From the NCBI RefSeq assembly GCF_902459465.1, contig NC_047072.1:16182001-16246000 (forward strand): a DNA stretch of 64,000 nt, read 5' to 3'. The stretch comes from Asterias rubens. Lineage: Eukaryota. The notes below the pieces were generated by a model. It made no database searches. It was not told the DNA's origin and saw nothing but the letters and a program-made list of their open reading frames with translations. Each line of letters begins with the position of its first letter. Position 1 is the stretch's first letter. Positions 11,857-52,603 of this stretch are shown here, one piece after another. The position numbers and the translations under genes were made by a program.

Positions 11857-12204
11857 AGGGTGTATGTAACTTTTGTAGGACAAAAAACACAATGTCCACA
11901 GATTTACACTAAACTTACACAGTTTGAAGATAATGATAGTTAAGAAATATTAAGTGATGAGGTGCTGTAGTTTTGGGGAAATGAGCAAAACAATGTCATG
12001 TAAACAGTTTTCGTCTCATGAGACGAAAATTATTTTAATCATTTACAAACGGTTTTCCATGACATTGTTTTACTCATTTCTCAAAAACTACAGCACCTCA
12101 GTAAGTAATTATTTGAAGGGAAGCTTTCCACTATCATTATCTTCAAACCTTGTAAGTTTAATGTAAATCTATGGATATTTATATTGAAAAGGTACCCAAA
12201 TCCT
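11857..12204. mobile_element. Second TTAA-flanked (Kolobok-type) MITE, 348 bp, nested in family 1
   Basis: TTAA at 11853-56 and 12205-08. Imperfect TIRs (AGGGTGTATGTAACTTTTG vs reverse complement AGGATTTGGGTACCTTTTC). The host sequence resumes colinearly on both sides. Confidence 0.8.
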
Positions 12205-12620
12205 TTAAGTTGCACAATGTGTGTGCTTTCAGGTGCTTAATACAAGTTTTTAGGCCTAAAGTCTATAGTATCCTTTAAGTTGCACAATCTGTGTGCTTTC
12301 AGGTGCTTAATACAAGTTGTTAGGCCTAAAGTCTATAGTATCCTTTAAGTTGCACCATGTGTGTGCTTTCAGGTGCTTAATACAAGTTTTTAGGCCTAAA
12401 GTCTATAGTATCCTTTAAGTTGCACAATGTGTGTGCTTTCAGGTGCTTAATACAAGTTTTTAGGCCTAAAGTCTATAGTATCCTTTAAGTTGCACAATGT
12501 GTGTGCTTTCAGGTGCTTAATACAAGTTTTTAGGCCTAAAGTCTATAGTATCCTTTAAGTTGCACAATGTGTGTGCTTTCAGGTGCTTAATACAAGTTTT
12601 TAGGCCTAAAGTCTATATTA
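12201..12620. repeat. Tandem array, 70 bp x 6
   Basis: Unit TCCTTTAAGTTGCACAATGTGTGTGCTTTCAGGTGCTTAATACAAGTTTTTAGGCCTAAAGTCTATAGTA starts at 12201, 12271, 12341, 12411, 12481 and 12551, with only a few substitutions. Confidence 0.97.
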
Positions 12621-13488
12621 TTATTTGAGTGAGAAATTACCTTTTTCTCAAAAATTACGCTATTTCAGAGGGAGCTGTTTTTCACCATGTTTTATACTAT
12701 CAACGACTTACCAAGTAAGTTGTGATGCTGACAATTATTTTGAGTTTACCAATAGTGTCCAGGGCCTTTAAGGAATAGCAAAAAGGTATTCCCTTGTTAA
12801 ACTCTTTCAATAGATGAGGCTACATCAGTCTAAGGATCTTATTATTCAAGATAAATTCTTGTGGTCATGGGTCAAATGCTAATATGAAATAATACTTTAA
12901 TTAGAGTAATTTCCTTTACTGGTTTATAGCCTAAAGTTATTTTAAAAAAAATACTGTTATCACTAAAACAGAAAGTGTAAAATATACATGAATAAAATAA
13001 TCACAACTAATGTGATTGGAATGGTAACTGACTTGCTATAGGGTGATTGACAGGGAGCATTTGAATGTGATATAAAATAGAGTGTCAGACTGTATCCCAT
13101 GTGTATAGCGTTGGGATTCACATGCAATTAGTGTAGTATTCTCCAACTGGGACTCCAAGATGTTTTCGTTATGGTGTTATATACCTCTAGGGAGTATAAT
13201 AATTACAATAACAAAACACCAATGTAGCACCAATCCATTGCTTGAAGGAAGGTTGGAAGAATACTTAACACTTTGCTACCTAGTCAACTTAACACGCTTA
13301 GACGAGTCCATCAGATTCATCATTCGAAATAAAATGGACTCCATCTTCATCAATCTGTCGTCTTAAAACATGTCAAGTAGAGTCTACAAAATCCACCTTT
13401 TTGACAAGTTTCTCCCCCAACTATACCAGTCAGCTACTCGTGCTTGCTCGTTCGCTTCGCGAAAGATAATGGACAACACGCTACTTAA

Positions 13489-13900
13489 AGGGAAGGTATA
13501 CGCTTTGTAACCACTCTTAAATATAATGGCAATATTAAGCATACATCAGCTTTTGGGAGTATAAAGCATTTTGAGAAATATTTCATTTCGAAATTGTTAG
13601 ATTTTAATACTTAAATATTTATGTGCACGGTGTCTGTATAATATAAAAACAATACACATTTATAAAGCTGGTCGAATGCTTAATAAATAAGAGCTTTCTT
13701 TAAAAAGAAACACATTATTTATTTATTTGAACAAAGTGCACCCCCAAAAAACCAAGCTTGCTTCTTTCGTTTGTTTGTCTATTTTTTGGACGTGTTTCAG
13801 GTTTTACACTTATTATTTTACTTACGTGTACAGACATCACATACGCAGTACAAATGTCACAAAGTGTATGGCATTGGTCATAAGTGCTTGCTTTAAAAGT
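13489..13900. mobile_element. Probable left end of a further TTAA-flanked element (right boundary approximate)
   Basis: TTAA|AGGGAAGGTATAC start resembles TTAA|AGGGAACATATAC at 35301. No matching right TIR was found. Confidence 0.35.
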
Positions 13901-16900
13901 TAAACAAATAACTCAATGTGTTTGCATTTCAATGCACTATATATATCTGGGCCGAGACACGCATATAGTACAATGTTTATTATAAAAATAGGGGGGAAAG
14001 AATAGAATTTAAAGCAAAGGAGTAAAGTTTAATAAGGAAAATCAAATTGCTATTGATTAAATCTGAACAATTGTTCCTAAATTAAACAAAGTTAATTTAC
14101 TTACGCACAATCTCTTAACACTAATGTAATGTCAAAGGTGTATGAATGAAATTCATGGATAGTTCTTGAAAGCTTCTCCACTTTTTGATCTCAACTGTTT
14201 AGCATGACCACTAATTGACTTAGCTAATGGCAAGCCCTGCTCTTCTACCCCCAGCCTTTCGCCGGAGGGCATATTTTATAAGAAAGCATCGTAGCCTCTT
14301 GCTCAAGGAACCAAAAGCTCCTTGTTATAAAACAGTGCAGTATGTAACACGTGTAGTCGCCCGAAGGACTAGTGCAACTCGCATTCTGGACATACAAGTT
14401 GAATTAAATTGGTAAATTGGGTCTCTTAAGTTGCCAATCATGGACTCACCTCTCTCAATACTGCTTTATCACGGCAACTAGCCTCCAGATAGTCTTCATC
14501 TTTAGAGGATAGCATTTAACTGGGAGCTTTTTAAATGTCATGTAAATAAGAAGAGTGCTTTCGCTTCGGGATAGGGGGTGATGTCCCCTTCATAAATATT
14601 TAAAGAGTAACTTAGTCGACTCTTTTGTCTTCAAATCACATCAAAAGTAGAGAGAGTGTGTGTGAGGTTTTTGTATGAGACCAGAGTGGTGAGAGGTAGA
14701 AATGGGGACCTAATGTACATGGGATGTGGACGTTCATCGATACATCTCAGGGCCAACCCCGAGAAAACATTTAAACACGAAGAGAATTTCCGCGCCAAAA
14801 TATTAAACCTGAATACTTGTTTTCTCTTAGTGCTACGATTTGTTATTGTGGCTAGCGGAGTGGGCAAAGTCGAGATTCAATCAAAAAATACCTCAGATAT
14901 GAATCATATTCCTTTCTGTTTGGCGCACGTGCTAATACGAACGTCTCTCCTTTTCATGTTTTAACTTTGATTGTTCCCTTCTGCTTTGCAGGAGTGAGGA
15001 TTATTGGAAAAGGTAATTGACTTGGTGAAGGAGTGACAAAAACACTCTCATAAACAACCCACCATTCTCTCCAAACAACCACAGTGTTTGGCAATTTTTA
15101 TATTAACATCTTGTCTCCCGTTCCAGGATCTTAGATGCAGGCACAAGAAAGCGGCGCTAAGGAGCACTCTAGTGTTGGGTTTTGTTGTTGCAGCTGTCTG
15201 GGTGTAAAGGAATCTCTGAGATTGTCAGTTGTGGAACTACATAATGACCACAAGGCGGCGTGAGACTGCACTCAATATTCTGGTCACACACCTCCATCAC
15301 ACACTGTTTATTACAAGCCGTATCAATACGCACTGTCCACCTTTCCTTTACTCAGATGTCAAAATAAGTTTCTCTCCTAAGTCGATTGAATGATAATAAG
15401 AAGTGAGGACAATATGATAAGATAAGAATCAAATTTACTCCTTGATCAAAGATTCGATTTATAAATTTGCGCCGAAGATGTCTTAAACCACTTGCCCCTT
15501 TTAACCAAAGTGCATTTTTACGTTGACTATTTATGAACCGGGAGCGATCGTACAGCACCTGGAGCTATCATTTAATTTCAATCAAATCCTTTCAAATGTC
15601 ATCAATCATTTCCAATTTTCTTCACATGATATTTTTATATTTATGACATGTGATAAGGATATCTGATTTCCATAGACGGCGCAAGTCTCTGTGAACAGAT
15701 TAAATTTTACATCTGACTTGTTCTAGGAAAAAAAGAATGACAATACTGTAGATATAGATTGCAGTTTGATATGAAACACTCTATGAAAACGATATTATTG
15801 TTATTAGATTACTTCAACAAGTTTGACAGCGTCATTGCCATGCGCCTTTGAACAGAAATGCTTTGTTTGGAGTTGACGCATTATAAATTTATTTGTATAT
15901 TATGATTATTTTATTTGAGCAAACGACAGTTAAATATTGAAAAGGCAGTTAAATATTTAAATGTTTTTTTTTATGGAGTATAAATTGTATGTATTCGGTA
16001 AATTAAACGGTTATTTTCATAACGCTTTTTACTCGTCACATGAGCCTCCGATGTGGTTCAAAATATTAAAGCTAAAATTAACCATTTTTTGAAAAGGCAG
16101 GAGTTTTTTTATGTGAGGGGCGATTATGAGGGGATTAGCCTAAAGAAAAGCAAAATACACTCGAAGCAAGTAGCCTGCGGTATTTGATATTTTGATATTT
16201 GTTTAAACACCCAACAGCCCAAACGATAATTTAGCATAATGTCTGTGCATGTTTGTCCACCGTGTCTGTGTTTATGAGCAAGGGAGTACGTAGTGTTTGA
16301 TCACCACTCCCTCGTTGCTCGGTATAAATGAAGGCAATTTCCCGCCGTGTTCCGCGACGTGAGACCCCATTGATCAGATGACGATCTACGCTAATTTGCT
16401 GAGCTTCAATGATGACATATGGGCACCTGACAATTTGCATTCGGAAACGGCACGTCACCGTGAGTGAACACTTCTTATTCTGATAGCACGTAGAACCAAG
16501 AAGAGTGTAAAATGAAGAGTGCCGACCACTATGGCAAAAAGTGCAAGCAGAAAAAGAGGGAAACGGTAACCATAGAAACCATGTTGACAACACCTAATCC
16601 TATATCTAGGTCGACCTCAGCTTCTGGCCATCAAACCCACCTTGATATGAACAAGGCTCGCCATTGCTAGATGAAGTTTGGATCCGTAAAGACGTCATAA
16701 CAAGTCCCAGTTGGCAAATATACAAACCATGACCACTCGTCATTAATTTCCGTTGCAGACCAAACACAAGTGAGCAGTAAAGTTTGACATTGTTGAGAAC
16801 CCATCCACTTCAACACATGTAGTTGACAATCGCCAAGAGACACGTTGATACAAAAAAAACTGTATTACTCGTCAAAAAAAATCTCCTGACAAATATGAAA

Positions 16901-17684
16901 TTGAAATGTCAGGAAGAGAATGCCAGCTTTTATTGAGCTCCATGTATTTACGCCGAGTGAACACGGAAATGTAAAGATACATCTGTCATTCAATAAAACT
17001 AATGACATGTCTATGTAAGTTTATTCCGCTTCATCAATAATATGTCACTAGATTTAATTGTCAAACTAGTGTCACACTAAAACTTCAACCAGTGAGCATG
17101 AAAGTATTGCCCCTAAAGTGTTGAACAGCAATTATGTGTAAACAACCAATCAGCGCGTTGTTACTTTGCAGCAGATACCACCGTGTCTGTGATTGGCTGA
17201 AAGTTTGCCTGTGTTGACGCCCGCTTTTAATGTGACGGCAGGCATACGTCAGTTTGTTATTTATAAGTTTACACAAGCATGGATTGAACACAGAATAATA
17301 AGTTTACGAGAATTATTGCAAATTAGCAATCAACAAGAAGAGCTATGATCTCTGTTATGTACAGTGACCTTTTACTTATATATTTAAACTTTACAATTAC
17401 AACTCTCGCATAACAAAATATTTGTTCAAGATCCCATGCAAGCATTTCTTTCTTTAACTGCAGAAGCAAAGAGGAAAGAAGATCTTGTATATTGATCGAG
17501 TAATGGCATGTTAGTTTGATCAGCAGTAATCTAAGGGCAGGAGGGAGCGGATACTTGCTCGAGCTTACTGAATTAGAAAGATTATTGATGTGGTTAGGAT
17601 TTACAGTAGTGGTGGGTTTGTTTAGGACAGTACACCTGTTTGCATGCAACCTGTCTCGTGAACGTGCAACTGAATTATATCACG

Positions 17685-18280
17685 ACACTACTGCATTACT
17701 AACATACTCAACCAAACACTCAAATATCTCACTACCATAGTACACGTCACCGTGGTCCAGTAGTTACTGCAGGTCTTGCAATCACAAGGTTGTGGGTTCG
17801 AATCCTAACCAGGCTAACTTAATTACTGATCGTGCTACACTACTGCATTACTAACATACTCAACCAAACACTCAAATATCTCACTACCATACTACACGTC
17901 ACCGTGGTCCAGTAGTTACTGCAGGTCTTGCAATCACAAGGTTGTGGGTTCGAATCCTACCAGGCTAACTTAATTACTGATCGTGCTACACTACTGCATT
18001 ACTAACATACTCAACCAAACACTCAAATATCTCACTACCATAGTACACGTCACCGTGGTCCAGTAGTTACTGCAGGTCTTGCAGTCACAAGGTTGTGGGT
18101 TCAAATCCTACCAGGCTAACTTAATTACTGATCATTCGACTGCTGCATTTACAAACGGACAACACTAAACTCGTAACTCCAAACTCTCTTTTTAATCCAG
18201 TATGAATCAGCATGGTCTAGTGGTTAGACTGCATGACTTGCAATTACAAGGTTGTGGGTACGAGTTCTACCAGACTAACT
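17685..18280 (+). repeat. Tandem array of tRNA-derived (SINE-head-like) modules: 3 near-identical units of about 151 bp plus 1 diverged unit
   Basis: Units start at 17685, 17837 and 17988. Each has an A-box-like TGGTCCAGTAG (17753-63), a B box GGTTCGAATCC (17795-17805; GGTTCAAATCC in unit 3) and a T-arm GTGGG/CCTAC. The diverged copy near 18205-18280 has a GTCT/AGAC D-stem. Confidence 0.85.
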
Positions 18281-18396
18281 GCTAGCTTCACGGCGAATAA
18301 AATGCCATGTATAGTTACCGATTCACAATTCTGAAATTCATAACCATTTCAACCAATGTTTGTATGAGAAAGATCTACATAGCTTGCCAATTACAT

Positions 18397-18586
18397 NNNN
18401 NNNNNNNNNNNNNNNNNNNNNNNNNNNNNNNNNNNNNNNNNNNNNNNNNNNNNNNNNNNNNNNNNNNNNNNNNNNNNNNNNNNNNNNNNNNNNNNNNNNN
18501 NNNNNNNNNNNNNNNNNNNNNNNNNNNNNNNNNNNNNNNNNNNNNNNNNNNNNNNNNNNNNNNNNNNNNNNNNNNNNNNNNNNNNN
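18397..18586. other. Assembly gap (190 N)
   Basis: Run of N in the sequence. Confidence 1.
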
Positions 18587-19234
18587 AAAGTATACTTTGA
18601 ACAAAGCAGAAAGATCATGTCCGTGTACATGTACAAGTTACTTTGCAGACTTTTCTCTGTCGCAGTATTATTCGCAGGTGCATATTGTTTGAATTTGTTT
18701 GCCCAAAGGTTTTTAAAGATTTCTAAACTTAAGTCCATATTCCATCCAAAAAATCTAACCGAGAATTCCAAATGCTCATCTATTGACTGTAATGTTTTTA
18801 ATAGTTGATAAAAATGTCGAATGAGTATTTTTACCCTACGGAAACCCTAACGATGAACAAACATGTATAGAATCAGAGTGAATGGGATATTTCTGTTGTC
18901 ACCTGCATGGTCTACTGAATGGAAGAATTTGATAGGAATCTTGGTGTAGTCACGAACGCTAATTTCAATATGTCACTCAGTGACTCAATATAATTGCTGG
19001 TATTAGAAGCTTTCATGCTATGAATCCCGTTCACTTCAACACGCAGCATCAAGTGAGAAATCAAGTAAATATGATCGCTCTTTCCACATGAGGTACTCGC
19101 AGATAAACACAACTCGCAGCACTATAATCAAATTAATAATATCGTAGTACGAGTGCAGGTTTGAATGAATGCACGTTGGATCGCAAAGCGAACATTTATG
19201 TTTTTCTAATCAGCTTTAAATCCCGAATAAGAAG

Positions 19235-19296
19235 AAGCTAATTAAAGCGAAATATAAGAACTTCTAAAGTTCTTTTTGTTTCGCTTTAATTAGCTT
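19235..19296. repeat. Isolated imperfect inverted repeat with arms of about 28 bp
   Basis: AAGCTAATTAAAGCGAAATATAAGAACT-TCTAA-AGTTCTTTTTGTTTCGCTTTAATTAGCTT. Confidence 0.8.
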
Positions 19297-19354
19297 TTAA
19301 TTACCAATTTTGTGCAGTGCCTTCAAGGATAACTAAACATTAATTGTCTTTGGA

Positions 19355-19718
19355 ATGCACTGGACACTATTGGTAATTACTCAAAATATGTATTAGTATA
19401 CATAAACTGACTATAAGTAACGATCAATGGAGAGACGTTGATAGCATAAAACATTGTAAGAAACGGCTCCCTCTGAAGTGACGTAGATTTTGAGAAAGAG
19501 ACAATGCCTCACTCAAGTTTGAAACTGAGAAGGACTTCTGGCCTGAAGCCTCTCTCAGGCATCTGAAAGCACAACATTGAAATTGTGTTCAGCAAGAGTG
19601 TTTTTTCTTTCATCAATTTCTTGCAAATTCGATTAGCAATTGGCCCCAAGTTTGTACAGAGTTGTTATTGTATGCATAAGTGAAAATACTGGTCTTTGGC
19701 AATTGTGCACAGTGCCTT
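19355..19718. mobile_element. Kolobok-type MITE family 1 copy
   Basis: ATGCACTGGACACTATTGGTAATTAC ... CACAGTGCCT(T)TTAA. Contains a single-copy equivalent of the 43-bp satellite unit (GGCCTGAAGCCTCTCTCAGGCATCTGAAAGCACA). Confidence 0.85.
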
Positions 19719-20527
19719 TTAAACATCAAAAGGTAATAACTGCTTCCGTAATACAACATATAAGACAAGAACAACTCGTCAGTTAATATTATGGATTTTC
19801 TTCTTCTAGGTTGAAGCTTGTTACAAAGGTTATGGAAAGTCAGCGCTGGGCTAATTTGAACAAGGTCTACAGTGATCCATCATACCGGATGATCTTAGGG
19901 CGGAGCGACCCCGGGGAAGCCCGAGTCTGCGCAGTGGTAAACGAGACACGTTATTGCGCGGCAAACCACTCGCATCAATCTCTAAAAGGCTAGCGACAAG
20001 GGAACTCCAACGTCAAATGAAAAGAGCAGTAGTGGTTTCAATGGGTTACTGTCAACTCATGATCTGCAAGGCGTTCTCTAAACATAAAAAGTTGGCGGTG
20101 TCTGTTCTTCACACTCTACAAAACAAAGCACATGGATGTGTTTCTATACAAGTTTGATTGATAGTAGAGATTTTGAAACAACTTTTCCGATTCTTCTCAT
20201 CTCTCATCTTGATGCCTTCTCATCATTGAACATACTATCATCATCGCGATGTGACATTCACCAAATGTTTTTGAATTCCTCACACGCTCTATGATTGATC
20301 CAGGGTTATGTGATGTGAATGTGGAGTCAGTGAATTCGAACTACACCGATAGTCAAGTATCAGTGTGTTTACTGCTTAGAACTCAGCCTGCTTGGATGGA
20401 CAAGTGCAGTGTTTTCAGTAGACATAACACTAAATCTACACCCTGAAAGTAAATGTTGGTTGACTGCGTCCGAAATCGGCACTAACGCATCCCGCATCTG
20501 TGATTTGAGACTAGTTATAGGTCCATC

Positions 20528-21919
20528 ATGGATGCAACTATCCCGCTCATTTGCAGCTTTCATATTCTAGTTTTTCTGATCGGCGTACCGGGAAATCTTC
20601 TTATCCTGCAAGTTTTTGTCAAGAAAACCCGAAAGACTAGTACCAATGTTTTCATAATGGCATTGGCGTCCGTAGACCTTATGGCATGTCTTTTGAGACC
20701 AGTGTTTGTGGGAAACAACATGGTACTTGTTGTAACGGGAGAGTATCCCTCAATATGGAGTGAAATCATTTATTACGTTTTAACTTATACCACTATTTAT
20801 AGCTCGACAATTTTAACTGCAGCAATTGCATTCGACCGCTACGATGCCGTATGTAGACCACATACTCGACTCCTAACATACTTTGGGGCACAAGTTGTTG
20901 CGGTGTGTTGCTGCGTTGTATCTTTACCAATGACTGTACCAACTGTCTTGATGTATTTTAGGCCAACATTAGCAGTTCGTCTGTCGAGACATTGTCTTTC
21001 TTTATCAACATACATCATCTCTCTTCTACTTGTAATCATCTTTTACATCTGTGTCTATAAAGCTGTTTTGTATCGCACCAAAGTACGGACCAAGTGGGGA
21101 CGCTTTACCGGTGTTACGGCAGCCGTGGAGAACTCGGTGTCCGTAGCCGGACAAACAGAAGTTTCAACTTTAGCAGCAGCTACAAGAGACATAAGTAAAC
21201 TGAGTCCAGTTACTGAACAATGCGCACTTCAGGATGTGAACCATGGACAGAGTGATACGCAGTTTGATTCCAAACCAAACCAGACATCATCTCCAACTGA
21301 TTTGGAAATCGTGAGTTTGAAAGACAATAAACAGTCGGTAGTTTACCGAAACCTTGGTACAAATGAAGGACCCTCGAATGCCCAAAACCCCCCAAGTTAT
21401 TCCTCCCTATCTCCTGAGATCCAAGAAACATCTTCAAGTGCGGTGAGTGAAAATCTTAAAGTTCCAATTTCTCCTCAGATATCAGGGTGTGGTACCTCGA
21501 CGTCAGCAACGAATAGCTCTACCAAGAGACAACGGTCACCAAGCGAGAGAGTCAAATCCTCTAAAAGTATCGCAGTAAGGATGCAAAATAAAACCACTAG
21601 AATGCTTCTAATTACTACCATTGTGTTCTTCGTAACTTGGATCCCATACATGTGTTTAGCTTCTATCAGCATTTATCACATGGTTGCCCAAGTTGAACCT
21701 AACAAAACTTTAATGAGTTTTTTCTCCACGGCATCTCATCTTCTATTAATTAATAACGCAGGAAACCCATTTATTTATGTACTCGCAAATAGACAGTTCC
21801 GAAATGACTGTCAGCGGGAGGTACGTCGATTAGCGCGCATAATTCAACCTTGCTGTAGATGTTTCATGTGTTCTCCATTAGTCAATATGATCAGACGTTG
21901 TGGCAATACTACTGTCTAA
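20528..21919 (+). CDS. Intronless class A (rhodopsin-like) orphan GPCR, 463 aa
   Basis: Seven hydrophobic segments with class A motifs: GN (TM1), LASVD (TM2), DRY (res. 103-105), TWIP (TM6), NPFIY (TM7), helix-8 FR and a Cys-rich C-tail. Long Ser/Thr-rich ICL3. The ligand and subfamily cannot be assigned from sequence alone. Confidence 0.95.
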   Translation: MDATIPLICSFHILVFLIGVPGNLLILQVFVKKTRKTSTNVFIMALASVDLMACLLRPVFVGNNMVLVVTGEYPSIWSEIIYYVLTYTTIYSSTILTAAIAFDRYDAVCRPHTRLLTYFGAQVVAVCCCVVSLPMTVPTVLMYFRPTLAVRLSRHCLSLSTYIISLLLVIIFYICVYKAVLYRTKVRTKWGRFTGVTAAVENSVSVAGQTEVSTLAAATRDISKLSPVTEQCALQDVNHGQSDTQFDSKPNQTSSPTDLEIVSLKDNKQSVVYRNLGTNEGPSNAQNPPSYSSLSPEIQETSSSAVSENLKVPISPQISGCGTSTSATNSSTKRQRSPSERVKSSKSIAVRMQNKTTRMLLITTIVFFVTWIPYMCLASISIYHMVAQVEPNKTLMSFFSTASHLLLINNAGNPFIYVLANRQFRNDCQREVRRLARIIQPCCRCFMCSPLVNMIRRCGNTTV

Positions 21920-22202: not shown

Positions 22203-22570
22203 GCCAGTACACTATTGGTAATTGTCAAAGACCAGTCTTCTCACTTGGTGTATCTCAACATATGCATAAAATAACAAACCTGTGAAAAATTTGAGCTCGA
22301 TTGGTTGTCGGGGTTGCGAGATAACTATAAAAGAAGAAAAAACACCCTTGTCACACGAAGTTGTGTGCTTTCAGATGCTTGATTCCGAGACCTCAAATTC
22401 TAAACTTGAGGTCTATAAATAAAATTCATGGAAAATTACTTCTTTCTCGAAAACTATGTCACTTCAGAGGGTGCCGTTTCTCACAATGTTATTTTACTCC
22501 CCATTACTCGTTTAAACCAAGGAAGGTTTTAATAATTATTTTGAGGAATTACCAATAGTGTCCACTGCCT
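22203..22570. mobile_element. Kolobok-type MITE family 1 copy (subfamily with the GAGACCTC...GAGGTCTC central hairpin)
   Basis: TTAA at 22199-22202 and 22571-74. TIR ...TACACTATTGGTAATT / AATTACCAATAGTGTCCACTGCCT. Confidence 0.88.
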
Positions 22571-23483
22571 TTAAGCATGCTTTAAGCATGCTCTGCAGTT
22601 GGTTGCCTGTAAAAGTTGCTTGGTTTGAAGGCCCTTATCTTTGGAGAAATACGGTTGGATGATTCAACACGGCACTGGTTCATTGCATTCGATTAGGCAA
22701 GGTACAAGTATGCAAAGTGACATTAAATGTGCGATATTGTTATAAAGCAAGCATGTATTATCAAATGTGTATTGATAAAAAGGAACTTTTTTTTCATGTA
22801 AAAGAAATGGTTAAACTTTTGTGAGTTATTTCATTAGACGTAGACAACGTGGACATCAAGATCTGTAGTTCCTTTCAGTTTAAAAACAAAATGTCAATGC
22901 TCTCCAATAATTGTTTTTCATAAGTTTTTGTTTTAGTTGTCGTTGTTTGCCCTAAGGTTTTAGATATTGTTACAAATCTTGTAGCATAGTTTTTAGATTT
23001 TTCTATGAAATATTTCGTTACTTCGCTTTAATTTTGTGTTTTGAGAAACTGAAAATCGTTATCGCGTTGTGGTCAATCAATAGGATGCAAAGTGCAGGAG
23101 TTGCCACGATGTAGACAACCATGTCCCAAGGGGTTAATGCTTCTAGGGTTAGAATACTATCCATTGAAAAGTGCAATCAAATAATCATGACCAAGGCTCT
23201 GTACTACTAGTCTCTATATAGTTTGAATATATCATTCCTTTTTATGAGAATAAACATGGAGTATTTAATGGTACGTGTTTGAAAGCTGTATATATTACAA
23301 GAATGCATGTTTATAATTTAGTAGTGACTAGCATTGGTAATAACTGTAATATAAATAATACACGTCGTCCAACTCCAATTGGAGCAATTTATTTCAGGTG
23401 TAGTATTCGTTGGTTCACCCAATAGTGTCACGTGATATGTTGCCGAGCAGTGCGGTAGTAATTCCGTGATGGGTAATGATCAT

Positions 23484-35582: not shown

Positions 35583-35586
35583 TTAA

Positions 35587-35800: not shown

Positions 35801-35908
35801 AAATCCAGAATGGCGTAGGTAAAAGGTAAATCCAGAATGGCGTAGGTAAAAGGTAAATCCAGAATGGCGTAGGTAAAAGGTAAATCCAGAATGGCGTAGG
35901 TAAAAGGT
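35801..35908. repeat. Tandem array, 27 bp x 4, perfect
   Basis: AAATCCAGAATGGCGTAGGTAAAAGGT at 35801, 35828, 35855 and 35882. Confidence 0.97.
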
Positions 35909-36719
35909 ATCATGTTTTAAAGTACACATCTCCGAGGGTGCCGACTCTCAACCCGACCCATACGCATTATACAATGTCAACAACAACAGTCTCAATCACA
36001 CGACTACGAGCATCTATCGATAAAGAAGAAAGACATCAATAAGATGTAGAGCATCTTAGAGAGGAGGGGTCGACAAGATGGAAATACCGTTTGAAAGGAT
36101 AAGCAGGAAAGGTTTGCTATCTAAGAGAAAATGTTACGTGGTGATGGCAAAAGTATGAGAGCTCTCACATTTCATTTTAAAGGTGGATTTTAAAGAGAAT
36201 CTATGTTAAAATTATTTTAACGAGACCAATTTACGGAATTACAAGATGCATTTTAATAGAAACAATAGCAAATGAACAGTGAAGGAGTTTGACCAAATTG
36301 GAAGATTGTATCAAGGCATTTGATCAAGAATGACACAAACTTTTCATCTAATAACAATTTTAAGCCAATAAACTGCAAAGTAGCGACATTAATAATAATG
36401 TGCTGCCGATAGATGGTGTCAAGAAGAGCTAGATTGATGAAATAAGAAAGGTAGGGAGAGGATGATGATCGAATTGGTATCATTGAGGATCAGAGGTGAT
36501 ATAAACTAAATCAAGAAATATATAACGATGAAAAAACTATCGTCTTAACGGGAGAAAGAAAGATCGGTACGATCTGAATTCAAAATGAGTCCAGAGAATA
36601 AATCGTAGCCGCTAAGGTGCATCAAGGAAACATGTAAGATAAGAGGGCGTTGTGGAAGATGTGAAAAGGTCGATGCTACGACCACAAGAACACATTGAAG
36701 ATAACTGGAAGGAGGGGTG

Positions 36720-37317: not shown

Positions 37318-37993
37318 AACTGTGCACACTGACAAACATTAACAACTGTGCACACTGACAAACATTAACAACTGTGCACACTGACAAACATTAACAACTG
37401 TGCACACTGACAAACATTAACAACTGTGCACACTGACAAACATTAACAACTGTGCACACTGACAAACATTAACAACTGTGCACACTGACAAACATTAACA
37501 ACTGTGCACACTGACAAACATTAACAACTGTGCACACTGACAAACATTAACAACTGTGCACACTGACAAACATTAACAACTGTGCACACTGACAAACATT
37601 AACAACTGTGCACACTGACAAACATTAACAACTGTGCACACTGACAAACATTAACAACTGTGCACACTGACAAACATTAACAACTGTGCACACTGACAAA
37701 CATTAACAACTGTGCACACTGACAAACATTAACAACTGTGCACACTGACAAACATTAACAACTGTGCACACTGACAAACATTAACAACTGTGCACACTGA
37801 CAAACATTAACAACTGTGCACACTGACAAACATTAACAACTGTGCACACTGACAAACATTAACAACTGTGCACACTGACAAACATTAACAACTGTGCACA
37901 CTGACAAACATTAACAACTGTGCACACTGACAAACATTAACAACTGTGCACACTGACAAACATTAACAACTGTGCACACTGACAAACATTAAC
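37318..37993. repeat. Perfect minisatellite, 26 bp x 26
   Basis: AACTGTGCACACTGACAAACATTAAC; 676 bp = 26 units; no variant unit seen. Confidence 0.98.
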
Positions 37994-42239: not shown

Positions 42240-42367
42240 ACAATAATTCCACTGTTAAACATTATATTGAGCATCTACATTCACTTTGAAAGCAATGCTG
42301 GACAATAATTCCACTGTTAAACATTATATTGAGCATCTACATTCACTTTGAAAGCAATGCTGGACAA
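42240..42367. repeat. Perfect 62-bp tandem duplication
   Basis: CAATAATTCCACTGTTAAAC...GCAATGCTGGA at 42241 and 42303. Confidence 0.95.
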
Positions 42368-42877: not shown

Positions 42878-42923
42878 GTCTCCTGAGGATGACTAGAGCA
42901 GGCTAGTCGAAACGTTCGGAGAC
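42878..42923 (+). ncRNA. Minimal type I hammerhead-ribozyme-like motif (Penelope-like terminal repeat)
   Basis: GTCTC-CTGAGGA-T-GACTAG-AGCAGG-CTAGTC-GAAA-CG-TT-CG-GAGAC. This gives stem I, the CUGANGA core, a 6-bp stem II, GAAA and a palindromic ACGT stem III. Two extra nt precede the stem I 3' strand. Confidence 0.55.
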
Positions 42924-43780: not shown

Positions 43781-44029
43781 GCTTCAACAGTAGACTTGTT
43801 TAAATCGAATTACCGCTCTTGCTTTCTGTTTCCACCCACTCACAAATGCAACCGAACATTGCAAATCAGACTGAGTGTTTTAACAAGGGGTCTGCTAGCC
43901 AATTAGATGGCTCACAATTTAGTACATGCCTGGTCTAGCTGGCTGCTTGTCATTTATACATGTCAACCACTGATTGTTCGAATTACTTCAATTAAGTAAT
44001 GCACATTTTAGGTTAGTGGTAGCACCGTG

Positions 44030-45190
44030 AGTAAAATCTCTTTTGAGTAGCGTTGGTTCTGAAAAGAACCGTTGGTTGACAACTCAATGTTTCATTCAGA
44101 TGCTTTGGTGGTCTGAAATGCAGCTAAAGGAAATCTACAAATTTGGACCAGGGGAAACTCTAATTGACCAATTAATGATTGGCTACTGGTCCTGATGTCT
44201 AGTTATCGTGAAATGTTAAAAACCCAGTCTTGGGTTTAAGATCTGTTGGAGAAAATGATAACTCAATTTGATGTTAAACAGAAAATACTGCTTGACAATG
44301 CCTTGCTAAGCAATTTTGAGTAGGGCATCAGCCTCAACACCGCAAACTTACTGTAATATTAGATTGTAACCTGTTTCTGCTAAGAAAGTCTTACTGCGCT
44401 TAGCAAGCTTTTGTTTTTACAGGCTCTATGAAATTGGGCATTTGAAAAACAATGCCTGGACTCTAACAAGTTCAGGTTGTACACTGTTATCGTTTGACCA
44501 AACGTACCTCAGTCCAAAATCCAACTGAGTTGTAACATTTTCAGTTTTCACCTGTTACACACTCGAGTTATTTTAATCATTTTTCATCGATAGAAGTCGT
44601 GGGTTGTTGAGTTAGTAGCGCAAGTAAGCTGTTTGCATAACTGAATGCACTGCTTTACCGTCCAAGGTTATCTTAGCAGGTGCATCTTGCTGTTGAATCA
44701 ATCTTCATGTTTTAACACGGAGGCGTTTATCCCTTCAAGTCCGGTAAAACTGTACACTATAATGCATCAAAATGAGAGCCTTGCTGTGATAATAGTGGTT
44801 TGTATCAATATTCATAACTCTAATTAGAGGTGGGTAGCCTCTTTTGAGTAGTGTTGGTTCTGAAAAAAACGGTGGTTGATAACTCGACGTTTCGATCAGT
44901 ATGCTCTGATTGTCTTCATTTCTCCTATCTGGAGACAATCAGAGCGAGCTGATCGAAACGTTGAGTTGTCTTTCAACCACCGTTTTTCCCCCAGACCAAA
45001 CACTTACCAAGAGAGATATTCATATTGTGTTACTTACACTACAGAAAACCTCACCTAATAGTAATACTTCCACCATAAATTCTAAACCAAACCATTATTT
45101 TCAGAACCAACACAACTCAAAAGAGATGTTTCACTTGGTGTGACTGAAAACCTCACAATTATAATAATTACTTCCACCACAGCACCATGC
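44030..45190. mobile_element. Cluster of Penelope-like terminal-repeat fragments, including an inverted pair
   Basis: TTCAGAACCAAC...CTCAAAAGAGAT segments occur in both orientations (about 44040, 44840, 45100). A long inverted repeat at 44865-44987 carries hammerhead-like cores. Confidence 0.55.
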
Positions 45191-46837
45191 GAAGTATCAA
45201 TCCTTAGTATTTATACTCTAGACTAATACATAATGTCCCTTAAAAGCTCATGAGATAATGAATTTAGTCCATTTCGGAGAGAAAACAGGCTCTTTATACA
45301 CACTTAATTACACGTATACGTTTGCCCCAAATAACCATAAATTTACGCTGCATATATTATTTATCGTGTTTGGTTAATGAAAACACACAAATTGCCGTGT
45401 ATAACACTAAGTGCTGTCTGCGGGCACTTTGTCCCTCCAAGGGGCAGGTTTCACTTTCTTAAATTACCAAACTCATTTTGATGAGTCATTATTCAGAACT
45501 CTGTTACTGTGAAATAGAATGCGTTCAGTAAACAACTTTCTCCCTACAGCGAGCCACTATTCCGATTCAACTTCAGCTATCTGGTATGAGAAAACTCGTG
45601 GAATAGAACATCACAAGTAAGATTACTCCATGACAAATTTCATCACGAAAAATCATTGCCTGTACTCTCTCTATCTTCGAAAGATGAAAACTGTATCCGA
45701 TCAAAAACAACTCATACATTTTTCAGAAAAGTTCAGTTATCGCTTTTTAGAGACAGGTCATTCACATTCAAGAAGGTATTAAACTGCAAGTACTGACGAT
45801 ATTATAAAAGGTTGTAGACCATTGAAGAGTTTCACATGTTGCAATGCGAAATGTCAGAGTTGTTAGAATAGAGCTTTATAACACGCTCTCTGATCGATAC
45901 CAAACCATTTTCACCTGCGCATTCACTCTCGAATCAACAAGATTTTCCTCTTTCCAAAGCGCTATTTTCTGCGGTTTTGATTCGGAATTTTTTGTCCTAT
46001 GTTTGCTTCGTCATTCAGCACGAACGCAAACGCGTCTGGTGCATAGTAACATGTACTTGACTTTCATACTAAACCCCTGGGAACTAGACAGCTCTAATTT
46101 GTATACCATTATACTGTGTAATTCAACCCAGGGTTCCTAATCCACATCTTTAAGAAAGAAAAAAATGGATTTCGGAAGTCAGTTTTACACCGACAATTAT
46201 TTTGATCAATAGGAAAAGAAACTTGAATAAGTGCTTTTCAGTCTTGAAATGTGTTTACCTAGCCTCTTTTTTTCTCGTGTTAACTTTCTCCACAAAGCCT
46301 AAAGTGCATGGTATCAATTGGTAATAAATATAGCAACCATGGTCGGTCAGTGTTGTTGACTTATACGGAAGTCACTCGCTAGGGGAAGGCGACAACTCAA
46401 GACAGCGTGGCGGTCTTCAATAATTCATCCGGAAAAGAAAACTTTGCGTTTTATAAGAGGTTTTCCGTTGTTTTTCTTAGCGGTAAGATTTCTTTCTACT
46501 GTTCCTATTCTCGTTCTACGGCAAATATTGACTTTCTTGAGTTACAATACTTCATCCTTTAACCGTCACCTCACTCTCCATAGTTGCTTGAACCGTTGTG
46601 TTCATTTTGCATGGATCCATACACAAACTGTTATTAAATTCACTAGTCATTCACGCCCCTTTGCCTCAATTATTTCTCATCATTTTCTTTTCGTAAGTGT
46701 GTTCGTAGCACTACTGGATTAATAACTCTTTCTTATTCCAGCATCTTGTTGGCACAGATAGACTAGAAGGTAAATGGAGTCTAATGTCTTACTGTTGGGA
46801 TGCGATCCCCACACACCCTAATATTGACATTTGGGAA

Positions 46838-47160
46838 CTAGCAAAAAACCTTGGTAAGCAGTGCAGAGTTGGTTGTTGAAAGTAGAAAACATTGTGAGAA
46901 ACTGCTCCCACTGAAGTAATGCTGTTTTTGAGAAAGAGGTAATTTCTCTCTCAAATATTAACAGTTTTCAGGCCTAAAGCCTTTATCTATGCATCTGAAA
47001 GCACATAATTTTTATTTTGCATCTTCGATTACCAAATGAACCAAAATTTTCACAGGTTTGCTATTTTATGCATATTGGAACCACCAAGTGAGAATACTGG
47101 TCTTGGACAATACTGGTCTTCGATATTACTATAATTACCAAAGGTTTCCATGACGTGCCT
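46838..47160. mobile_element. Kolobok-type MITE family 1, decayed (left end approximate)
   Basis: Interior matches the family; ends GTGCCT|TTAA (47161-64). Confidence 0.75.
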
Positions 47161-47239
47161 TTAAACATTAAGAAGATTATTGCCTGTAATGATACACTGT
47201 GATGGCCACCTTTGTATTGCTAGCTCACACTGACTGTAA

Positions 47240-49150
47240 TAAAGGGAGTCCTCGACAAAACCCCATCTCTTACCTTTAACTACTGAAGGAAACTGCAATA
47301 TGCATTCATATTGAACTTGAAATGGGAAACAAATTACAACTAAACCTCACTCGAGCACGAACCCCATTGCCATATAGAATCTGAATAGATTGATTTGCCA
47401 AGCCTCTAGTCTTCACGCACTTTGTGACTCTTTCTATTCAAGTCGTACCTTTACCTTCAATCCCCGACTCTGAATTGGTGTTTGTTTTTAATCTGCAGCT
47501 TTCAGATTCTAACAAATGTTTGAGCGCCAAAGGTTACCGAACCTGCAGGCGTTTTATGATACTCTGTTTGTGTCCAAAGCTTCTAGTAATTTAAAGATTA
47601 CTCTCTCGTTTCCAGTGGAAACAATCTTTATATTGATGATATATTGATCTTCACTAATTCAACTCGATAGGTAATCTATTGTCAGGATCAGAGACAGGTT
47701 AAATTTGCATACTTTCACAAGTCCTGTGTTTTCCTCATTGGCAAACAAACTCTGTTCCAGAGTTCAGTGAATTTACCGATTCATTACAAGCTCTAATTAG
47801 GACCATTAATCTTACAGTCTAATGTCTTGGGTGAGTTCAACGATCCTTTCTAATAATATCAAAATAAGCTTGATAAATGATGGAAAGTTCTGCATCTCCA
47901 ATCATGATAGGTTTGTATACCTTAAATACAGTACTTCCTAAAGTCAAGATTTCAGACGAAAAATTATACCATCGTCATCTACAACTGTTCCAACGATCCA
48001 GTGACACATGTGAATTTGCGCCAAACACAGAATGGGCATTATATGACATTTATCGATGATTTGATAAGAAATATAGTATTGCGGGGATTTGACAAAGGGA
48101 AAACAAAAGCAAAGCCAGTGGCGACCCGAATAACAACATATTCTGGACTGAGCAAAGTCCACTCAAACCAAACGTAGATTTAGGCAAACTTGTGTTGTGT
48201 CATATGGACAGCTTTCCACTCGAAATTAATTCAATTTCACCCTTGAAGAGAGGTTGAATAATTTCCAATAAGATGATTAAAAACTTGTGGTTTCAAGAGC
48301 CATATAGCTTGATACGCTATAGGAGGAATGACCTACTATAATTGACCACTGTCGTCTACAGGGAAAAATGTGATAGACCCCTAGATATTTTATCATATAA
48401 TGAAATTTAAAAAGTAAAAATCAAGAAACCTGTCTACGTCACTAACGCCCAAAGTGCCAGTGCAATGTTATAACTCGCTCTTTAATTTTATTTTCAGAGT
48501 ACACCTGATGTATTTTTCTTGCAACTAATCAAATGGAAAAAGTTGAATTTGCAATATGTCCTTTTGCCAAAGCCCTGTAGCTACGCCATGCACGATCAAT
48601 GAAACGAATGACGATTTCTGTTCATTTGTGTCTATATCTACACATTCCAACTCTATCTTTCTGTGTTTGTGTATTTGTTTGTCTCTACCCCCAATGCATT
48701 CAGAATTCTAGGCCAATTTGTAATCCCGAGTCAATATTCTTATCATGTTAGACGAGAAACTCGAGTGGTCAACTCATCTAGTTCCCGCAGGCTGTTCCAT
48801 TTCTTTCAAATTATATACATCTCCATCTTTTGGCAGTCTAAGACAGAACCTCCAGTATTCTCTCTGGTCGTCCTTCTTGCAAATCGCAATTAATTAGCAG
48901 ATTGACCATCCTTATGCTAGTCTTGATTCATCCAACCATTTGGAATTCTGTTCCAGTATTTCTTTCTCATCTTATCCCTTAAGAAATCTCTACACAGACT
49001 TCCACATTTGTCCTCATCTATTTTCTGCAGAAAGGTCTTAGCTGAGTCACTGGCTGTGTGTGTTGCAGCCTTGATGTTTGTTGTGTAGAGATTAATGACC
49101 AACTCATCAACCTTTTCCTCTTCGTGCCCAAACTCTCAATCTTTCCAGCT
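47240..49150 (-). pseudogene. Decayed non-LTR retrotransposon (LINE) ORF2 fragment
   Basis: Minus-strand remnants: SDPDNRLPIEL (resembles the SPGPDGLPxE RT motif, about 47660-47695) and GFCRGLPL (resembles GxRQGxPLS, about 47240-47265). Multiple stops. Confidence 0.45.
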
Positions 49151-49887
49151 CGCTAAGGTGTGTCCACATTACACATTATTACATTTAGATTAGTTAATAA
49201 CATCAAGAAGTGTTGTTTCAACCTCCAAACAGTGGTCGGTCACGTAATAACCACTTGCTTCCTATTTGTTCCTGTTTCTTGATTGCATTCATTCCTTGCA
49301 GAGTCTTGAAAGGATGAGAATTTCTTACATATTGATTCATTCTACTAAAAAAAAATACTTTACTTTAGATCAACATGAACCTTTCCTTCTCACCGTGACG
49401 TCATAACAAGTCTCAGCTGCAATAATACATAGGAAATGGAGCCTGCCGAGTGTAGTTTTTTCTTTCAGTCCACCCCTGATAAAATAACAGTACGTCTTGT
49501 ATCGCCCATCGGAAACATACCTTGAAGTTAACATAAATGTTACAAATCAAAGTTTGTACATTTTCGACACACATTGTACTCGATCCCTCTCCAGCTTTTG
49601 GTTTCTCTTTTCATGTTTAAAACATAATCGAATTTTTTCCACAACTTTCCAGATTTTAACTTTGACAGTAAACTCTCCTGTGATAGAGTAACACCAAAAG
49701 CCAAAGACATCATGAAATGACAGACGTTGTTTTTGCCGTGGGTCTTTATGAAGTCTAGATCATCACGGATATTGGCTCAAGCTTGATTTGACATTGCGAG
49801 GCACAACATAAAAGTACATTGCTTCTATGAACATACATGACTGAATACTCAAACCTATATTCATTGCATTTGTCTGGATTGTCTTAA

Positions 49888-52603
49888 AGGCACTGTAGAA
49901 TTACTTAAAACAATTGTTAGAATAAAAACATACTTGGTATATCGAGCAATGGAGAGCTGTTGATAGTACAACACATTGTGAGGAACAGCTCCCTCTGAAG
50001 TAACATAGTTTTTGAGGAGAGGTAATTTCTCATTCAATTAAAAGTCAATATAGTTCAACTTCAAAAATCAATTAAAAGTCTTCAGGCCTGAAGCCTCTCT
50101 CATGACTCTGAAAGCACACTGGTTTGCACCCTGAAGCCTCTCTCATGACTCTGAAAGCACACTGGTTTGCACCCTGAAGCCTCTCTCATGACTCTGAAAG
50201 CACACTGGTTTGCACCCTGAAGCCTCTCTCATGACTCTGAAAGCACGCTGGTTTGCACCCTGAAGCCTCTCTCATGACTCTGAAAGCACACTGGTTTGCA
50301 CCCTGAAGCCTCTCTCATGACTCTGAAAGCACGCTGGTTTGCACCCTGAAGCCTCTCTCATGACTCTGAAAGCACACTGGTTTGCACCCTGAAGCCTCTC
50401 TCATGACTCTGAAAGCACGCTGGTTTGCACCCTGAAGCCTCTCTCATGACTCTGAAAGCACGCTGGTTTGCACCCTGAAGCCTCTCTCATGACTCTGAAA
50501 GCACGCTGGTTTGCACCCTGAAGCCTCTCTCATGACTCTGAAAGCACACTGGTTTGCACCCTGAAGCCTCTCTCATGACTCTGAAAGCACGCTGGTTTGC
50601 ACCCTGAAGCCTCTCTCATGACTCTGAAAGCACACTGGTTTGCACCCTAAAGCCTCTCTCATGACTCTGAAAGCACGCTGGTTTGCACCCTGAAGCCTCT
50701 CTCATGACTCTGAAAGCACGCTGGTTTGCACCCTGAAGCCTCTCTCATGACTCTGAAAGCACACTGGTTTGCACCCTGAAGCCTCTCTCATGACTCTGAA
50801 AGCACGCTGGTTTGCACCCTGAAGCCTCTCTCATGACTCTGAAAGCACACTGGTTTGCACCCTGAAGCCTCTCTCATGACTCTGAAAGCACACTGGTTTG
50901 CACCCTGAGGCCTCTCTCATGACTCTGAAAGCACACTGGTTTGCACCCTGAAGCCTCTCTCATGACTCTGAAAGCACACTGGTTTGCACCCTGAAGCCTC
51001 TCTCATGACTCTGAAAGCACGCTGGTTTGCACCCTGAAGCCTCTCTCATGACTCTGAAAGCACACTGGTTTGCACCCTGAAGCCTCTCTCATGACTCTGA
51101 AAGCACGCTGGTTTGCACCCTGAAGCCTCTCTCATGACTCTGAAAGCACTGGTTTGCACCCTGAAGCCTCTCTCATGACTCTGAAAGCACACTGGTTTGC
51201 ACCCTGAAGCCTCTCTCATGACTCTGAAAGCACGCTGGTTTGCACCCTGAAGCCTCTCTCATGACTCTGAAAGCACACTGGTTTGCACCCTGAAGCCTCT
51301 CTCATGACTCTGAAAGCACACTGGTTTGCACCCTGAAGCCTCTCTCATGACTCTGAAAGCACACTGGTTTGCACCCTGAAGCCTCTCTCATGACTCTGAA
51401 AGCACGCTGGTTTGCACCCTGAAGCCTCTCTCATGACTCTGAAAGCACACTGGTTTGCACCCTGAAGCCTCTCTCATGACTCTGAAAGCACACTGGTTTG
51501 CACCCTGAAGCCTCTCTCATGACTCTGAAAGCACGCTGGTTTGCACCCTGAAGCCTCTCTCATGACTCTGAAAGCACGCTGGTTTGCACCCTGAAGCCTC
51601 TCTCATGACTCTGAAAGCACACTGGTTTGCACCCTGAAGCCTCTCTTATGACTCTGAAAGCACACTGGTTTGCACCCTGAAGCCTCTCTCATGACTCTGA
51701 AAGCACACTGGTTTGCACCCTGAAGCCTCTCTCATGACTCTGAAAGCACGCTGGTTTGCACCCTGAAGCCTCTCTCATGACTCTGAAAGCACACTGGTTT
51801 GCACCCTGAAGCCTCTCTCATGACTCTGAAAGCACACTGGTTTGCACCCTGAAGCCTCTCTCATGACTCTGAAAGCACACTGGTTTGCACCCTGAAGCCT
51901 CTCTCATGACTCTGAAAGCACACTGGTTTGCACCCTGAAGCCTCTCTCATGACTCTGAAAGCACGCTGGTTTGCACCCTGAAGCCTCTCTCATGACTCTG
52001 AAAGCACGCTGGTTTGCACCCTGAAGCCTCTCTCATGACTCTGAAAGCACACTGGTTTGCACCCTGAAGCCTCTCTCATGACTCTGAAAGCACACTGGTT
52101 TGCACCCTGAAGCCTCTCTCATGACTCTGAAAGCACACTGGTTTGCACCATGAAGCCTCTCTCATGACTCTGAAAGCACGCTGGTTTGCACCCTGAAGCC
52201 TCTCTCATGACTCTGAAAGCACACTGGTTTGCACCCTGAAGCCTCTCTCATGACTCTGAAAGCACACTGGTTTGCACCCTGAAGCCTCTCTCATGACTCT
52301 GAAAGCACGCTGGTTTGCACCCTGAAGCCTCTCTCATGACTCTGAAAGCACGCTGGTTTGCACCCTGAAGCCTCTCTCATGACTCTGAAAGCACACTGGT
52401 TTGCACCCTGAAGCCTCTCTCATGACTCTGAAAGCACACTGGTTTGCACAACAAATGTGTTTTTCTTTCTTTATTCCCTTGCAACTGCGATGACCAAATG
52501 AATATAATATTTTAAAAAATCACAAATTAATTTGCATATTTATGTTGGGATACACCAAGTGAGAATACTGGTCTTTGACAATTACCAAAGCTACCTAATT
52601 CCT
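49888..52603. mobile_element. Kolobok-type MITE family 1 copy, inflated to 2.7 kb by an internal satellite
   Basis: TTAA (49884-87)|AGGCAC ... CCT|TTAA (52604-07). Family sequence is colinear on both sides of the array. Confidence 0.92.
50087..52449. repeat. Minisatellite, 43 bp x 55
   Basis: Unit CCTGAAGCCTCTCTCATGACTCTGAAAGCAC(A/G)CTGGTTTGCAC. 2363 bp = 55 x 43 minus one 2-bp deletion. Confidence 0.98.

What the first reader, a model, noticed from the sequence alone, without database searches (positions are those of the whole stretch)
12201..52449. Two independent satellites born from the same palindromic segment of one MITE family
Seen: the 70-bp x 6 array (12201-12620) and the 43-bp x 55 array (50087-52449) have different units. 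Both cover the homologous internal segment (AGGCCT-centred palindrome ... CTGAAAGCACAC ... TGCAC) of two different family-1 copies in opposite orientation. The 43-bp array starts exactly at the symmetry axis of CTTCAGG|CCTGAAG (50086/50087), and the 70-bp unit ends about 10 bp from the same palindrome. Inference: the central hairpin is a breakage, slippage or rolling-circle hot spot that makes this MITE family a recurrent satellite seed. This is the most system-like pattern in the window.
Basis: partly seen in the sequence, partly recalled or inferred. Interest (0 to 1): 0.7.

Follow-up and report, generated by a model that had tools for sequence, protein, structure and literature searches.

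The report
Two minisatellites inside old starfish MITEs
Two old copies of a very abundant small transposon in a starfish genome have each had a short internal piece copied head to tail (6 and 55 times); genome-wide checks show these are ordinary local repeat expansions, not the product of a special breakage point in the element.

Summary
TRF finds 70 bp x 6 (12200-12621) and 43 bp x 55 (50087-52449). Both units map to the same central stretch of a ~374-bp TTAA-flanked MITE ('family-1'), in two copies of opposite orientation. The 43-bp array begins exactly at the axis of CTTCAGG|CCTGAAG.

The hot-spot reading is not supported, for five reasons.
- Both arrays exist at one locus only.
- The 70-bp unit includes the last 9 bp of a younger MITE nested in the family-1 copy, so one of its breakpoints lies outside family-1.
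- The same genome-wide test finds 4 array loci from the centre, 4 from the left arm and at least 15 from the right arm.
- Of 11 arrays or duplications that hold a palindrome half, 3 have a junction near the axis; about 2.3 are expected by chance.
- The palindrome at the 43-bp locus folds no better than shuffled sequence (z -0.45).

Family-1 fills about 7% of the window, so two arrays in it that overlap on the consensus is unremarkable (roughly 0.3 by chance).

Most likely each array began as a tandem duplication with 0-2 bp of microhomology and then grew by slippage or unequal exchange. TE-derived minisatellites, and the palindrome-hot-spot idea itself, are already published. Other agents in this scan noted SINE- and MITE-derived arrays elsewhere in this genome.

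The parts
11745..11852 (-). Family-1 MITE copy 1, right arm (consensus ~225-374), ending in ...CCTTTAA
11853..12208 (.). Nested younger MITE ('MITE-2'). About 356 bp, flanked by TTAA on both sides, with a long internal inverted repeat. It is inserted into family-1 copy 1 at consensus ~224/225.
   Evidence: 40 scored genomic copies at 90-91% identity, all spanning query positions 23/24-379/380 (= window 11852/3-12208/9), out of 2,919 first-look candidates; self-inverted match.
12200..12621 (-). 70-bp x 6 array (+2 bp AT). Each unit is the last 9 bp of MITE-2 (ATCCTTTAA) plus ~61 bp of family-1 centre (consensus ~160-228), including the palindrome TTTAGG|CCTAAA.
   Evidence: A contig of run X3, from another study, spans the unit junction at 12550/12551 with no differences.
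12622..12771 (-). Family-1 copy 1, left arm (consensus 1-~160)
49883..50086 (+). Family-1 copy 2, left arm (consensus 1-174), ending in CTTCAGG, the left half of the palindrome
50087..52449 (+). 43-bp x 55 array (one unit is 41 bp). Each unit matches consensus ~175-217, from CCTGAAG to TTTGCAC. Two main variants (A or G at unit position 32; about 30 and 20 units) are interspersed.
52450..52613 (+). Family-1 copy 2, right arm (consensus ~222-374)
18397..18586 (.). Assembly gap (N). It is not part of either element and lies between the two loci.

Best explanation
These are two unrelated, young, single-locus minisatellite expansions. Each sits in an old, inactive copy of a very abundant ~374-bp TTAA-flanked MITE (about 7% of the window; copies are 71-81% alike).

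How each arose (inferred): a short stretch was first duplicated in tandem with almost no microhomology, 0 bp for the 43-bp unit and 2 bp for the 70-bp unit. That points to a replication template switch or an end-joining event. The duplicate then grew by replication slippage or unequal sister-chromatid exchange into a homogeneous array (98% identity; the 43-bp array interleaves two variants).

The 70-bp event happened after a younger MITE had inserted into the host copy, because the unit contains that element's last 9 bp.

The two units overlap on the consensus because the element is so common and short that such overlap is expected fairly often. The palindrome does not direct breakage. No function is implied.

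Shown here: anatomy, junctions, single-locus status, and the genome-wide spread of source segments. Inferred: the molecular mechanism of duplication and growth.
For: - Both arrays are unique to their loci.
- The family-1 arms are intact on both sides of each array.
- Microhomology at the array ends is 0-7 bp in 12 family-1 arrays examined.
- Arrays are 98% identical internally, against 71-81% between family-1 copies and 90-91% between MITE-2 copies. So the arrays are much younger than the host element.
- The 70-bp unit carries the MITE-2 terminus.
- Genome-wide triple-motif tests give 4 centre loci, 4 left-arm loci and at least 15 right-arm loci. Probe-motif counts in about 98 kb of sequence not chosen for arrays are 12, 16 and 26.
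- Junctions near the palindrome axis: 3 of 11, with ~2.3 expected (my arithmetic).
- The hairpin at the 43-bp locus is not significant.
- Family-1 covers 6.8% of the window.
- The chance that a 43-bp and a ~65-bp segment of a 374-bp element overlap is about 0.3 (my arithmetic).
Against: - The 43-bp array starts exactly at the palindrome axis. For that one junction alone the chance is about 1 in 34, given that the unit had to contain the probe motif.
- Two of the four strict centre-motif arrays in a 418-Mb genome lie 38 kb apart in this window. For randomly placed loci that is unlikely: about 0.001 for 4 loci, 0.014 for 13 central loci, 0.1 for ~35 family-1 loci.
- The survey is probe-based, needs exact 8-11-mers, covers units of roughly 20-90 bp, and three of its lists were truncated. 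It is not a complete breakpoint map.
Confidence: 0.8

Rival explanations
1. One reading: the central palindrome of family-1 extrudes a hairpin or cruciform that is cut or stalls replication. This would make that point a recurrent seed of arrays.
For: - The 43-bp array begins exactly at the axis.
- Two subfamily-B arrays, C15 (71 bp) and C18 (77 bp), have junctions within about 3 nt of the loop of a strong 15-bp-stem hairpin (-18.5 kcal/mol, z -9.7).
- A palindrome near repeat junctions was proposed as a hot spot in the clam MITE DTC84 (PMC3879986 abstract).
Against: - 8 of 11 arrays that hold a palindrome half keep the whole palindrome inside the unit.
- 3 junctions near the axis were seen; ~2.3 are expected by chance.
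- Left-arm and right-arm segments with no palindrome seed as many or more arrays.
- The subfamily-A palindrome at the 43-bp locus folds no better than shuffles (z -0.45).
- The 70-bp junctions lie 15 nt from the axis on one side and inside another element on the other.
Confidence: 0.1
2. A regional effect. This part of the chromosome (contig C12, about 16.1-16.25 Mb) is prone to recent tandem duplication of any sequence, and the abundant MITE is simply what was there. This can hold together with the best explanation.
For: - The window also holds tandem repeats that are 100% identical internally and lie outside family-1: 26 bp x 26 at 37318-37993, 27 bp x 4 at 35801-35909 and 62 bp x 2.1 at 42240-42367.
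- Two of the few central family-1 arrays lie 38 kb apart.
Against:
- The clustering p-value rises to about 0.1 when all family-1 arrays found are counted.
- The window was selected for study because it has two arrays.
Confidence: 0.2
3. The arrays belong to a tandem-repeat-bearing MITE subfamily and were spread by transposition, as in DTC84 or Xstir.
For: Such a variant does seem to exist for the right end of subfamily B. 59 bp x 5 sits at the element terminus at several loci, and at two loci the arrays are more alike (94%) than the element bodies (86%).
Against: Neither the 43-bp nor the 70-bp array occurs anywhere else in the genome. The 70-bp unit also contains part of a locus-specific nested insertion.
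Confidence: 0.02
4. Assembly artefact: the arrays are collapsed or inflated repeats.
For: Array copy numbers in assemblies are error-prone.
Against: - Both arrays have clean junctions into unique flanks and structured variants.
- A contig of another study (X3) crosses a 70-bp unit junction without a difference.
Confidence: 0.03

Closest known systems
TE-derived minisatellites (for example arrays born inside Alu, B1 or LTR elements; Haber & Louis model as summarised in PMC6947457)
   Same: A short internal piece of an old interspersed repeat is duplicated in place and then expands at a single locus. Both arms of the element remain around the array. Flanking homology is short or absent.
   Different: The host here is a TTAA-flanked MITE of a starfish. 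Flanking direct repeats are 0-2 bp, not the 5-10 bp of the classical model.
Tandem-repeat-containing MITEs and their satellites: DTC84/pearl in bivalves (PMC3879986), Xstir and miDNA4 in Xenopus (reviewed in PMC12628747)
   Same: The tandem units derive from internal MITE sequence.
   Different: In those families the array is part of the mobile element and is found in many copies. The 43-bp and 70-bp arrays are each at one locus, in dead copies, with different units. The closer analogue in this genome is the 59-bp x 5 terminal array of subfamily B and the 68/69-bp satellite on contig C9.
Classical satellite DNA
   Same: Head-to-tail organisation and high homogeneity within the array.
   Different: The arrays are 0.42 kb and 2.36 kb, at one locus each, and not abundant.

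Membership tests
MITE (for the host element 'family-1') | Terminal inverted repeats | tested here: met
   The consensus ends match in inverted orientation at 28 of the first 29 positions, TTAAAGGCACTGGACAC..TTGGTAATT.
MITE (for the host element 'family-1') | Target-site duplication | tested here: inconclusive
   Nearly all complete copies are bounded by TTAA...TTAA, with unrelated sequence beyond. This fits a TTAA duplication of the piggyBac type, but TTAA could also be part of the repeat ends. No empty site was examined.
MITE (for the host element 'family-1') | Small size and high copy number | tested here: met
   The consensus is 374 bp. There are 13 copies in 64 kb, covering 6.8% of the window, and further copies in nearly every 3-kb locus fetched. 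Coding capacity was not examined.
Tandem-repeat-containing MITE family (DTC84 / Xstir type) | Unit derived from internal MITE sequence, with the array lying between the element's arms | tested here: met
Tandem-repeat-containing MITE family (DTC84 / Xstir type) | The array is carried by many transposed copies of the element | tested here: not met
   Each array matches only its own locus in the 418-Mb genome.
Satellite DNA (classical) | Abundant, long arrays at several loci | tested here: not met
   one locus each, 0.42 kb and 2.36 kb
Hairpin or palindrome-driven rearrangement hot spot | A palindrome able to form a stable hairpin or cruciform | tested here: not met
   At the 43-bp locus the single-stranded DNA MFE is -2.8 kcal/mol, z -0.45, and 63 of 200 shuffles fold as well. 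Subfamily B, which hosts neither window array, does have a strong hairpin (-18.5 kcal/mol, z -9.7).
Hairpin or palindrome-driven rearrangement hot spot | Excess of rearrangement junctions at the palindrome compared with the rest of the element | tested here: not met
   Array loci found: centre 4, left arm 4, right arm at least 15. Junctions near the axis: 3 of 11, with ~2.3 expected. The survey is probe-based and partly truncated.
Hairpin or palindrome-driven rearrangement hot spot | Cruciform extrusion or breakage shown biochemically | not testable with these tools
   This needs S1 or T7 endonuclease I mapping on supercoiled DNA.

The most novel reading that the evidence does not exclude
Hairpin-tip breaks may still seed a minority of family-1 arrays. 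This would apply especially to subfamily B, whose centre is a strong 15-bp-stem hairpin, and the exact-axis start of the 43-bp array could be one such event. Alternatively, or in addition, this chromosome region may be a local hot zone for very recent tandem duplication.
Probability: 0.15. Interest if true: 0.4.

Novelty: new member of a known kind. Interest (0 to 1): 0.2.

Why it matters
It matters little beyond annotation. The case documents that in this starfish genome a hyper-abundant TTAA-flanked MITE is a frequent substrate for minisatellite birth along its whole length, and that its right terminus has produced multi-locus arrays. That is useful for repeat libraries and for anyone studying how satellites start from transposons. 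It does not reveal a new mechanism. The two arrays could serve as polymorphic markers.

Tried and rejected
- I tried to fetch 13 further array loci, including the C15 71-bp array and the C9 satellite. I had spent it on redundant loci. Those arrays were therefore mapped by eye from the 80-nt strings in the search outputs, and their flanks were not seen.
I did not try to get round this.
- Laying contigs on the 70-bp locus was swamped by MITE copies from elsewhere. It gave only one useful piece, the X3 contig across a unit junction.
- A baseline from the reversed-pattern controls (0, 1 and 1-2 arrays for three reversed 10-mers) gives no sign that family-1 is over-represented as an array source. 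It rests on 2-3 events, so I give it no weight.
- Literature searches found nothing on starfish MITEs or satellites.
- Rolling-circle origin was rejected: there are no Helitron features, both arrays sit in place between intact arms, and no second locus exists.
- The species was not established. The genome size (417.6 Mb) recalls, from memory, the Asterias rubens assembly; this is untested.
Full report
**What is there.** TRF on the window reports 16 tandem repeats. Among them are 12200-12621 (period 70, 6.0 copies, 98% matches) and 50087-52449 (period 43, 55.0 copies, 98% matches). The sequence shows that each array lies inside a copy of an interspersed element that occurs 13 times in the window.

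**The host element.** From 17 copies I built a 374-bp consensus. Its ends are inverted repeats, matching at 28 of the first 29 positions, and complete copies are bounded by TTAA...TTAA. Copies are only 71-81% alike. So 'family-1' is an old, very abundant MITE that covers 6.8% of the window outside the arrays. Earlier notes of this scan call the genome a starfish. It has 417.6 Mb in 150 contigs, and the window is C12:16182001-16246000.

The 43-bp unit aligns to consensus ~175-217 on the plus strand, and the 70-bp unit to ~160-228 on the minus strand.
- The 43-bp periodicity begins at 50087, exactly between CTTCAGG and CCTGAAG.
- It ends at 52449 with no partial unit and no microhomology.
- The family-1 arms continue on both sides with nothing lost.
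- The array has two main variants (A or G at unit position 32, about 30 and 20 units) that are interspersed. It also has three single-base variants, one 41-bp unit, and one unit that my splitting pattern missed because of a base change at its start.
- The 70-bp unit ends 15 nt from the axis of its own TTTAGG|CCTAAA palindrome.

A search of the genome with window 11830-12240 returned 40 scored copies, out of 2,919 first-look candidates, at 90-91% identity. All span query positions 23/24 to 379/380, which is window 11853-12208. This is a second, younger, TTAA-flanked MITE nested in family-1 copy 1. The 70-bp unit starts at 12200, so it contains the last 9 bp of that element (ATCCTTTAA). The 70-bp duplication is therefore later than the nested insertion, and one of its two breakpoints is not in family-1 at all.

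**Single-locus status.** Searching the genome with four units of the 43-bp array found only its own locus. Three units of the 70-bp array found only its own locus plus single central segments of ordinary family-1 copies. These are local minisatellites, not dispersed satellites.

**Genome-wide test of the hot spot.** I searched the whole genome for three exact copies of a conserved 10-mer, spaced to fit units of 30-90 bp.
- Central motif CTGAAAGCAC: four array loci. They are the two in the window, a 19-bp array on C11 and a 71-bp array on C15.
- Left-arm motif CCTCTGAAGT: also four loci, with units of 26, 40, 74 and about 50 bp.
- Right-arm motif ATACACCAAG: at least 15 family-1 loci with about 12 different units of 33-88 bp, plus two unrelated satellites. 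The list was truncated.
- In about 98 kb of sequence not chosen for arrays, the three motifs occur 12, 16 and 26 times.

So arrays arise all along the element, roughly in proportion to target abundance and with some excess from the right arm. The only real pile-ups of breakpoints are at consensus positions 306/316 and at the right terminus, 374.

**Junctions at the palindrome.** Searches for repeated palindrome halves (for subfamily A; for subfamily B), together, give 11 family-1 arrays or duplications that hold a palindrome half.
- Eight keep the whole palindrome inside the unit: C2 33 bp, C8 24 bp, C3 64 bp, C1 62 bp, C4 41 bp, C11 26 bp, C23 68 bp and C36 83 bp.
- Three have the novel junction within about 3 nt of the axis: the 43-bp array, C15 71 bp and C18 77 bp.

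Given each unit length and the need to contain the probe, I estimate about 2.3 such cases by chance. That is no enrichment.

**Hairpin strength.** As single-stranded DNA, the palindrome at the 43-bp locus has an MFE of -2.8 kcal/mol with z -0.45, and 63 of 200 shuffles fold as well. A second subfamily-A copy also shows no significant hairpin. The subfamily-B centre forms a 15-bp stem (-18.5 kcal/mol, z -9.7). Both window arrays sit in subfamily-A copies.

**Mechanism.** Across 12 family-1 arrays with flanks in hand, the periodic span exceeds a whole number of units by only 0-7 bp in most cases. That fits initial duplications made with little or no microhomology (template switching or end joining), followed by growth through slippage or unequal exchange. 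The high homogeneity (98%), set against 71-81% between host copies, dates the arrays long after the family's spread. These steps are inferred, not shown.

**Chance.** With family-1 at about 7% of the sequence, it is unremarkable that 2 of the window's 6 arrays with period of at least 15 bp and at least 3 copies lie in it (binomial p about 0.06). Two segments of 43 bp and ~65 bp on a 374-bp element overlap with probability about 0.3. What remains slightly odd is the exact-axis start (about 1 in 34 for that junction) and the closeness of the two loci (38 kb). Both were noticed after the fact, and I keep them as the 'novel case'.

**Independent support.** Contigs of four public runs were laid on 11650-12850. 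The picture is swamped by MITE copies from elsewhere, but one 100-nt contig of run X3, from another study, covers 12497-12596 across a unit junction without a difference.

**Assembly gap.** 18397-18586 is N. It lies between the loci and in neither element, and no repeat unit or frame runs into it. Continuity cannot be tested and was not guessed at. Only the distance between the arrays depends on it.

**Known context.** Birth of tandem repeats inside MITEs and other TEs is well documented: DTC84 in a clam, Xstir and miDNA4 in Xenopus, Tetris in Drosophila, and Alu-derived minisatellites. The DTC84 paper already proposes a palindrome near the unit junction as a hot spot for array length change. 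I found nothing on starfish MITEs. Earlier notes of this scan describe SINE- and MITE-derived arrays elsewhere in this genome. They agree with this reading but are unchecked leads.

**Verdict.** The hot-spot interpretation is not supported by a probe-based genome-wide survey.

Noticed in passing
window 11853-12208: A second MITE family, about 356 bp and TTAA-flanked, with a long internal inverted repeat (foldback-like). There are 2,919 first-look candidates in the genome, and the scored copies are 90-91% alike, so it is much younger than family-1. Here it is nested in a family-1 copy.
   Followed up: partly
L081:1448-1748, L084:1499-1794 (C3:22382692, C4:2405226); also C4:2890001, C7:67469: 59 bp x 5 arrays made of the last 59 bp of family-1 subfamily B, including the terminal inverted repeat and TTAA. 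They sit at the right end of otherwise complete elements at several loci. Between two loci the arrays are 94% alike but the element bodies only 86%. This looks like a MITE variant with a tandemly repeated terminus that may have transposed.
   Followed up: partly
G000:C9:443773-541480 and L090:1305-1768 (C5:18703458): A 68/69-bp satellite whose unit is the last ~69 bp of family-1. It forms many arrays over about 100 kb near the start of contig C9. This is the genome's better example of a satellite born from this MITE.
   Followed up: no
window 58990-59040 (and copies at 22215-22574, 53883-54270): Subfamily B of family-1 replaces the weak CTTCAGG|CCTGAAG centre by a different, strong palindrome, GAGACCTCAAGTT-TAG-AACTTGAGGTCTC (-18.5 kcal/mol, z -9.7). 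So a central inverted repeat is kept across subfamilies with a different sequence.
   Followed up: partly
window 37318-37993; 35801-35909; 42240-42367: Tandem repeats with 100% identity that lie outside family-1: 26 bp x 26, 27 bp x 4 and 62 bp x 2.1. These are very recent duplications in the same window.
   Followed up: partly
window 17685-18133 and 18205-18275: A 151-bp x 3 array whose unit ends in a tRNA-like sequence (GGTTCGAATC box), with a further tRNA-like copy just before the assembly gap. This is probably a tRNA-derived SINE repeated in tandem.
   Followed up: no
G000:C8:20614341, C12:2975290, C15:3956867, C15:8176265: An identical 62-bp tandem array (unit begins CCTGAAGCAATATCCCGCCC) at four or more dispersed loci, each with about 4-5 copies. 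It is probably carried by a mobile element.
   Followed up: no
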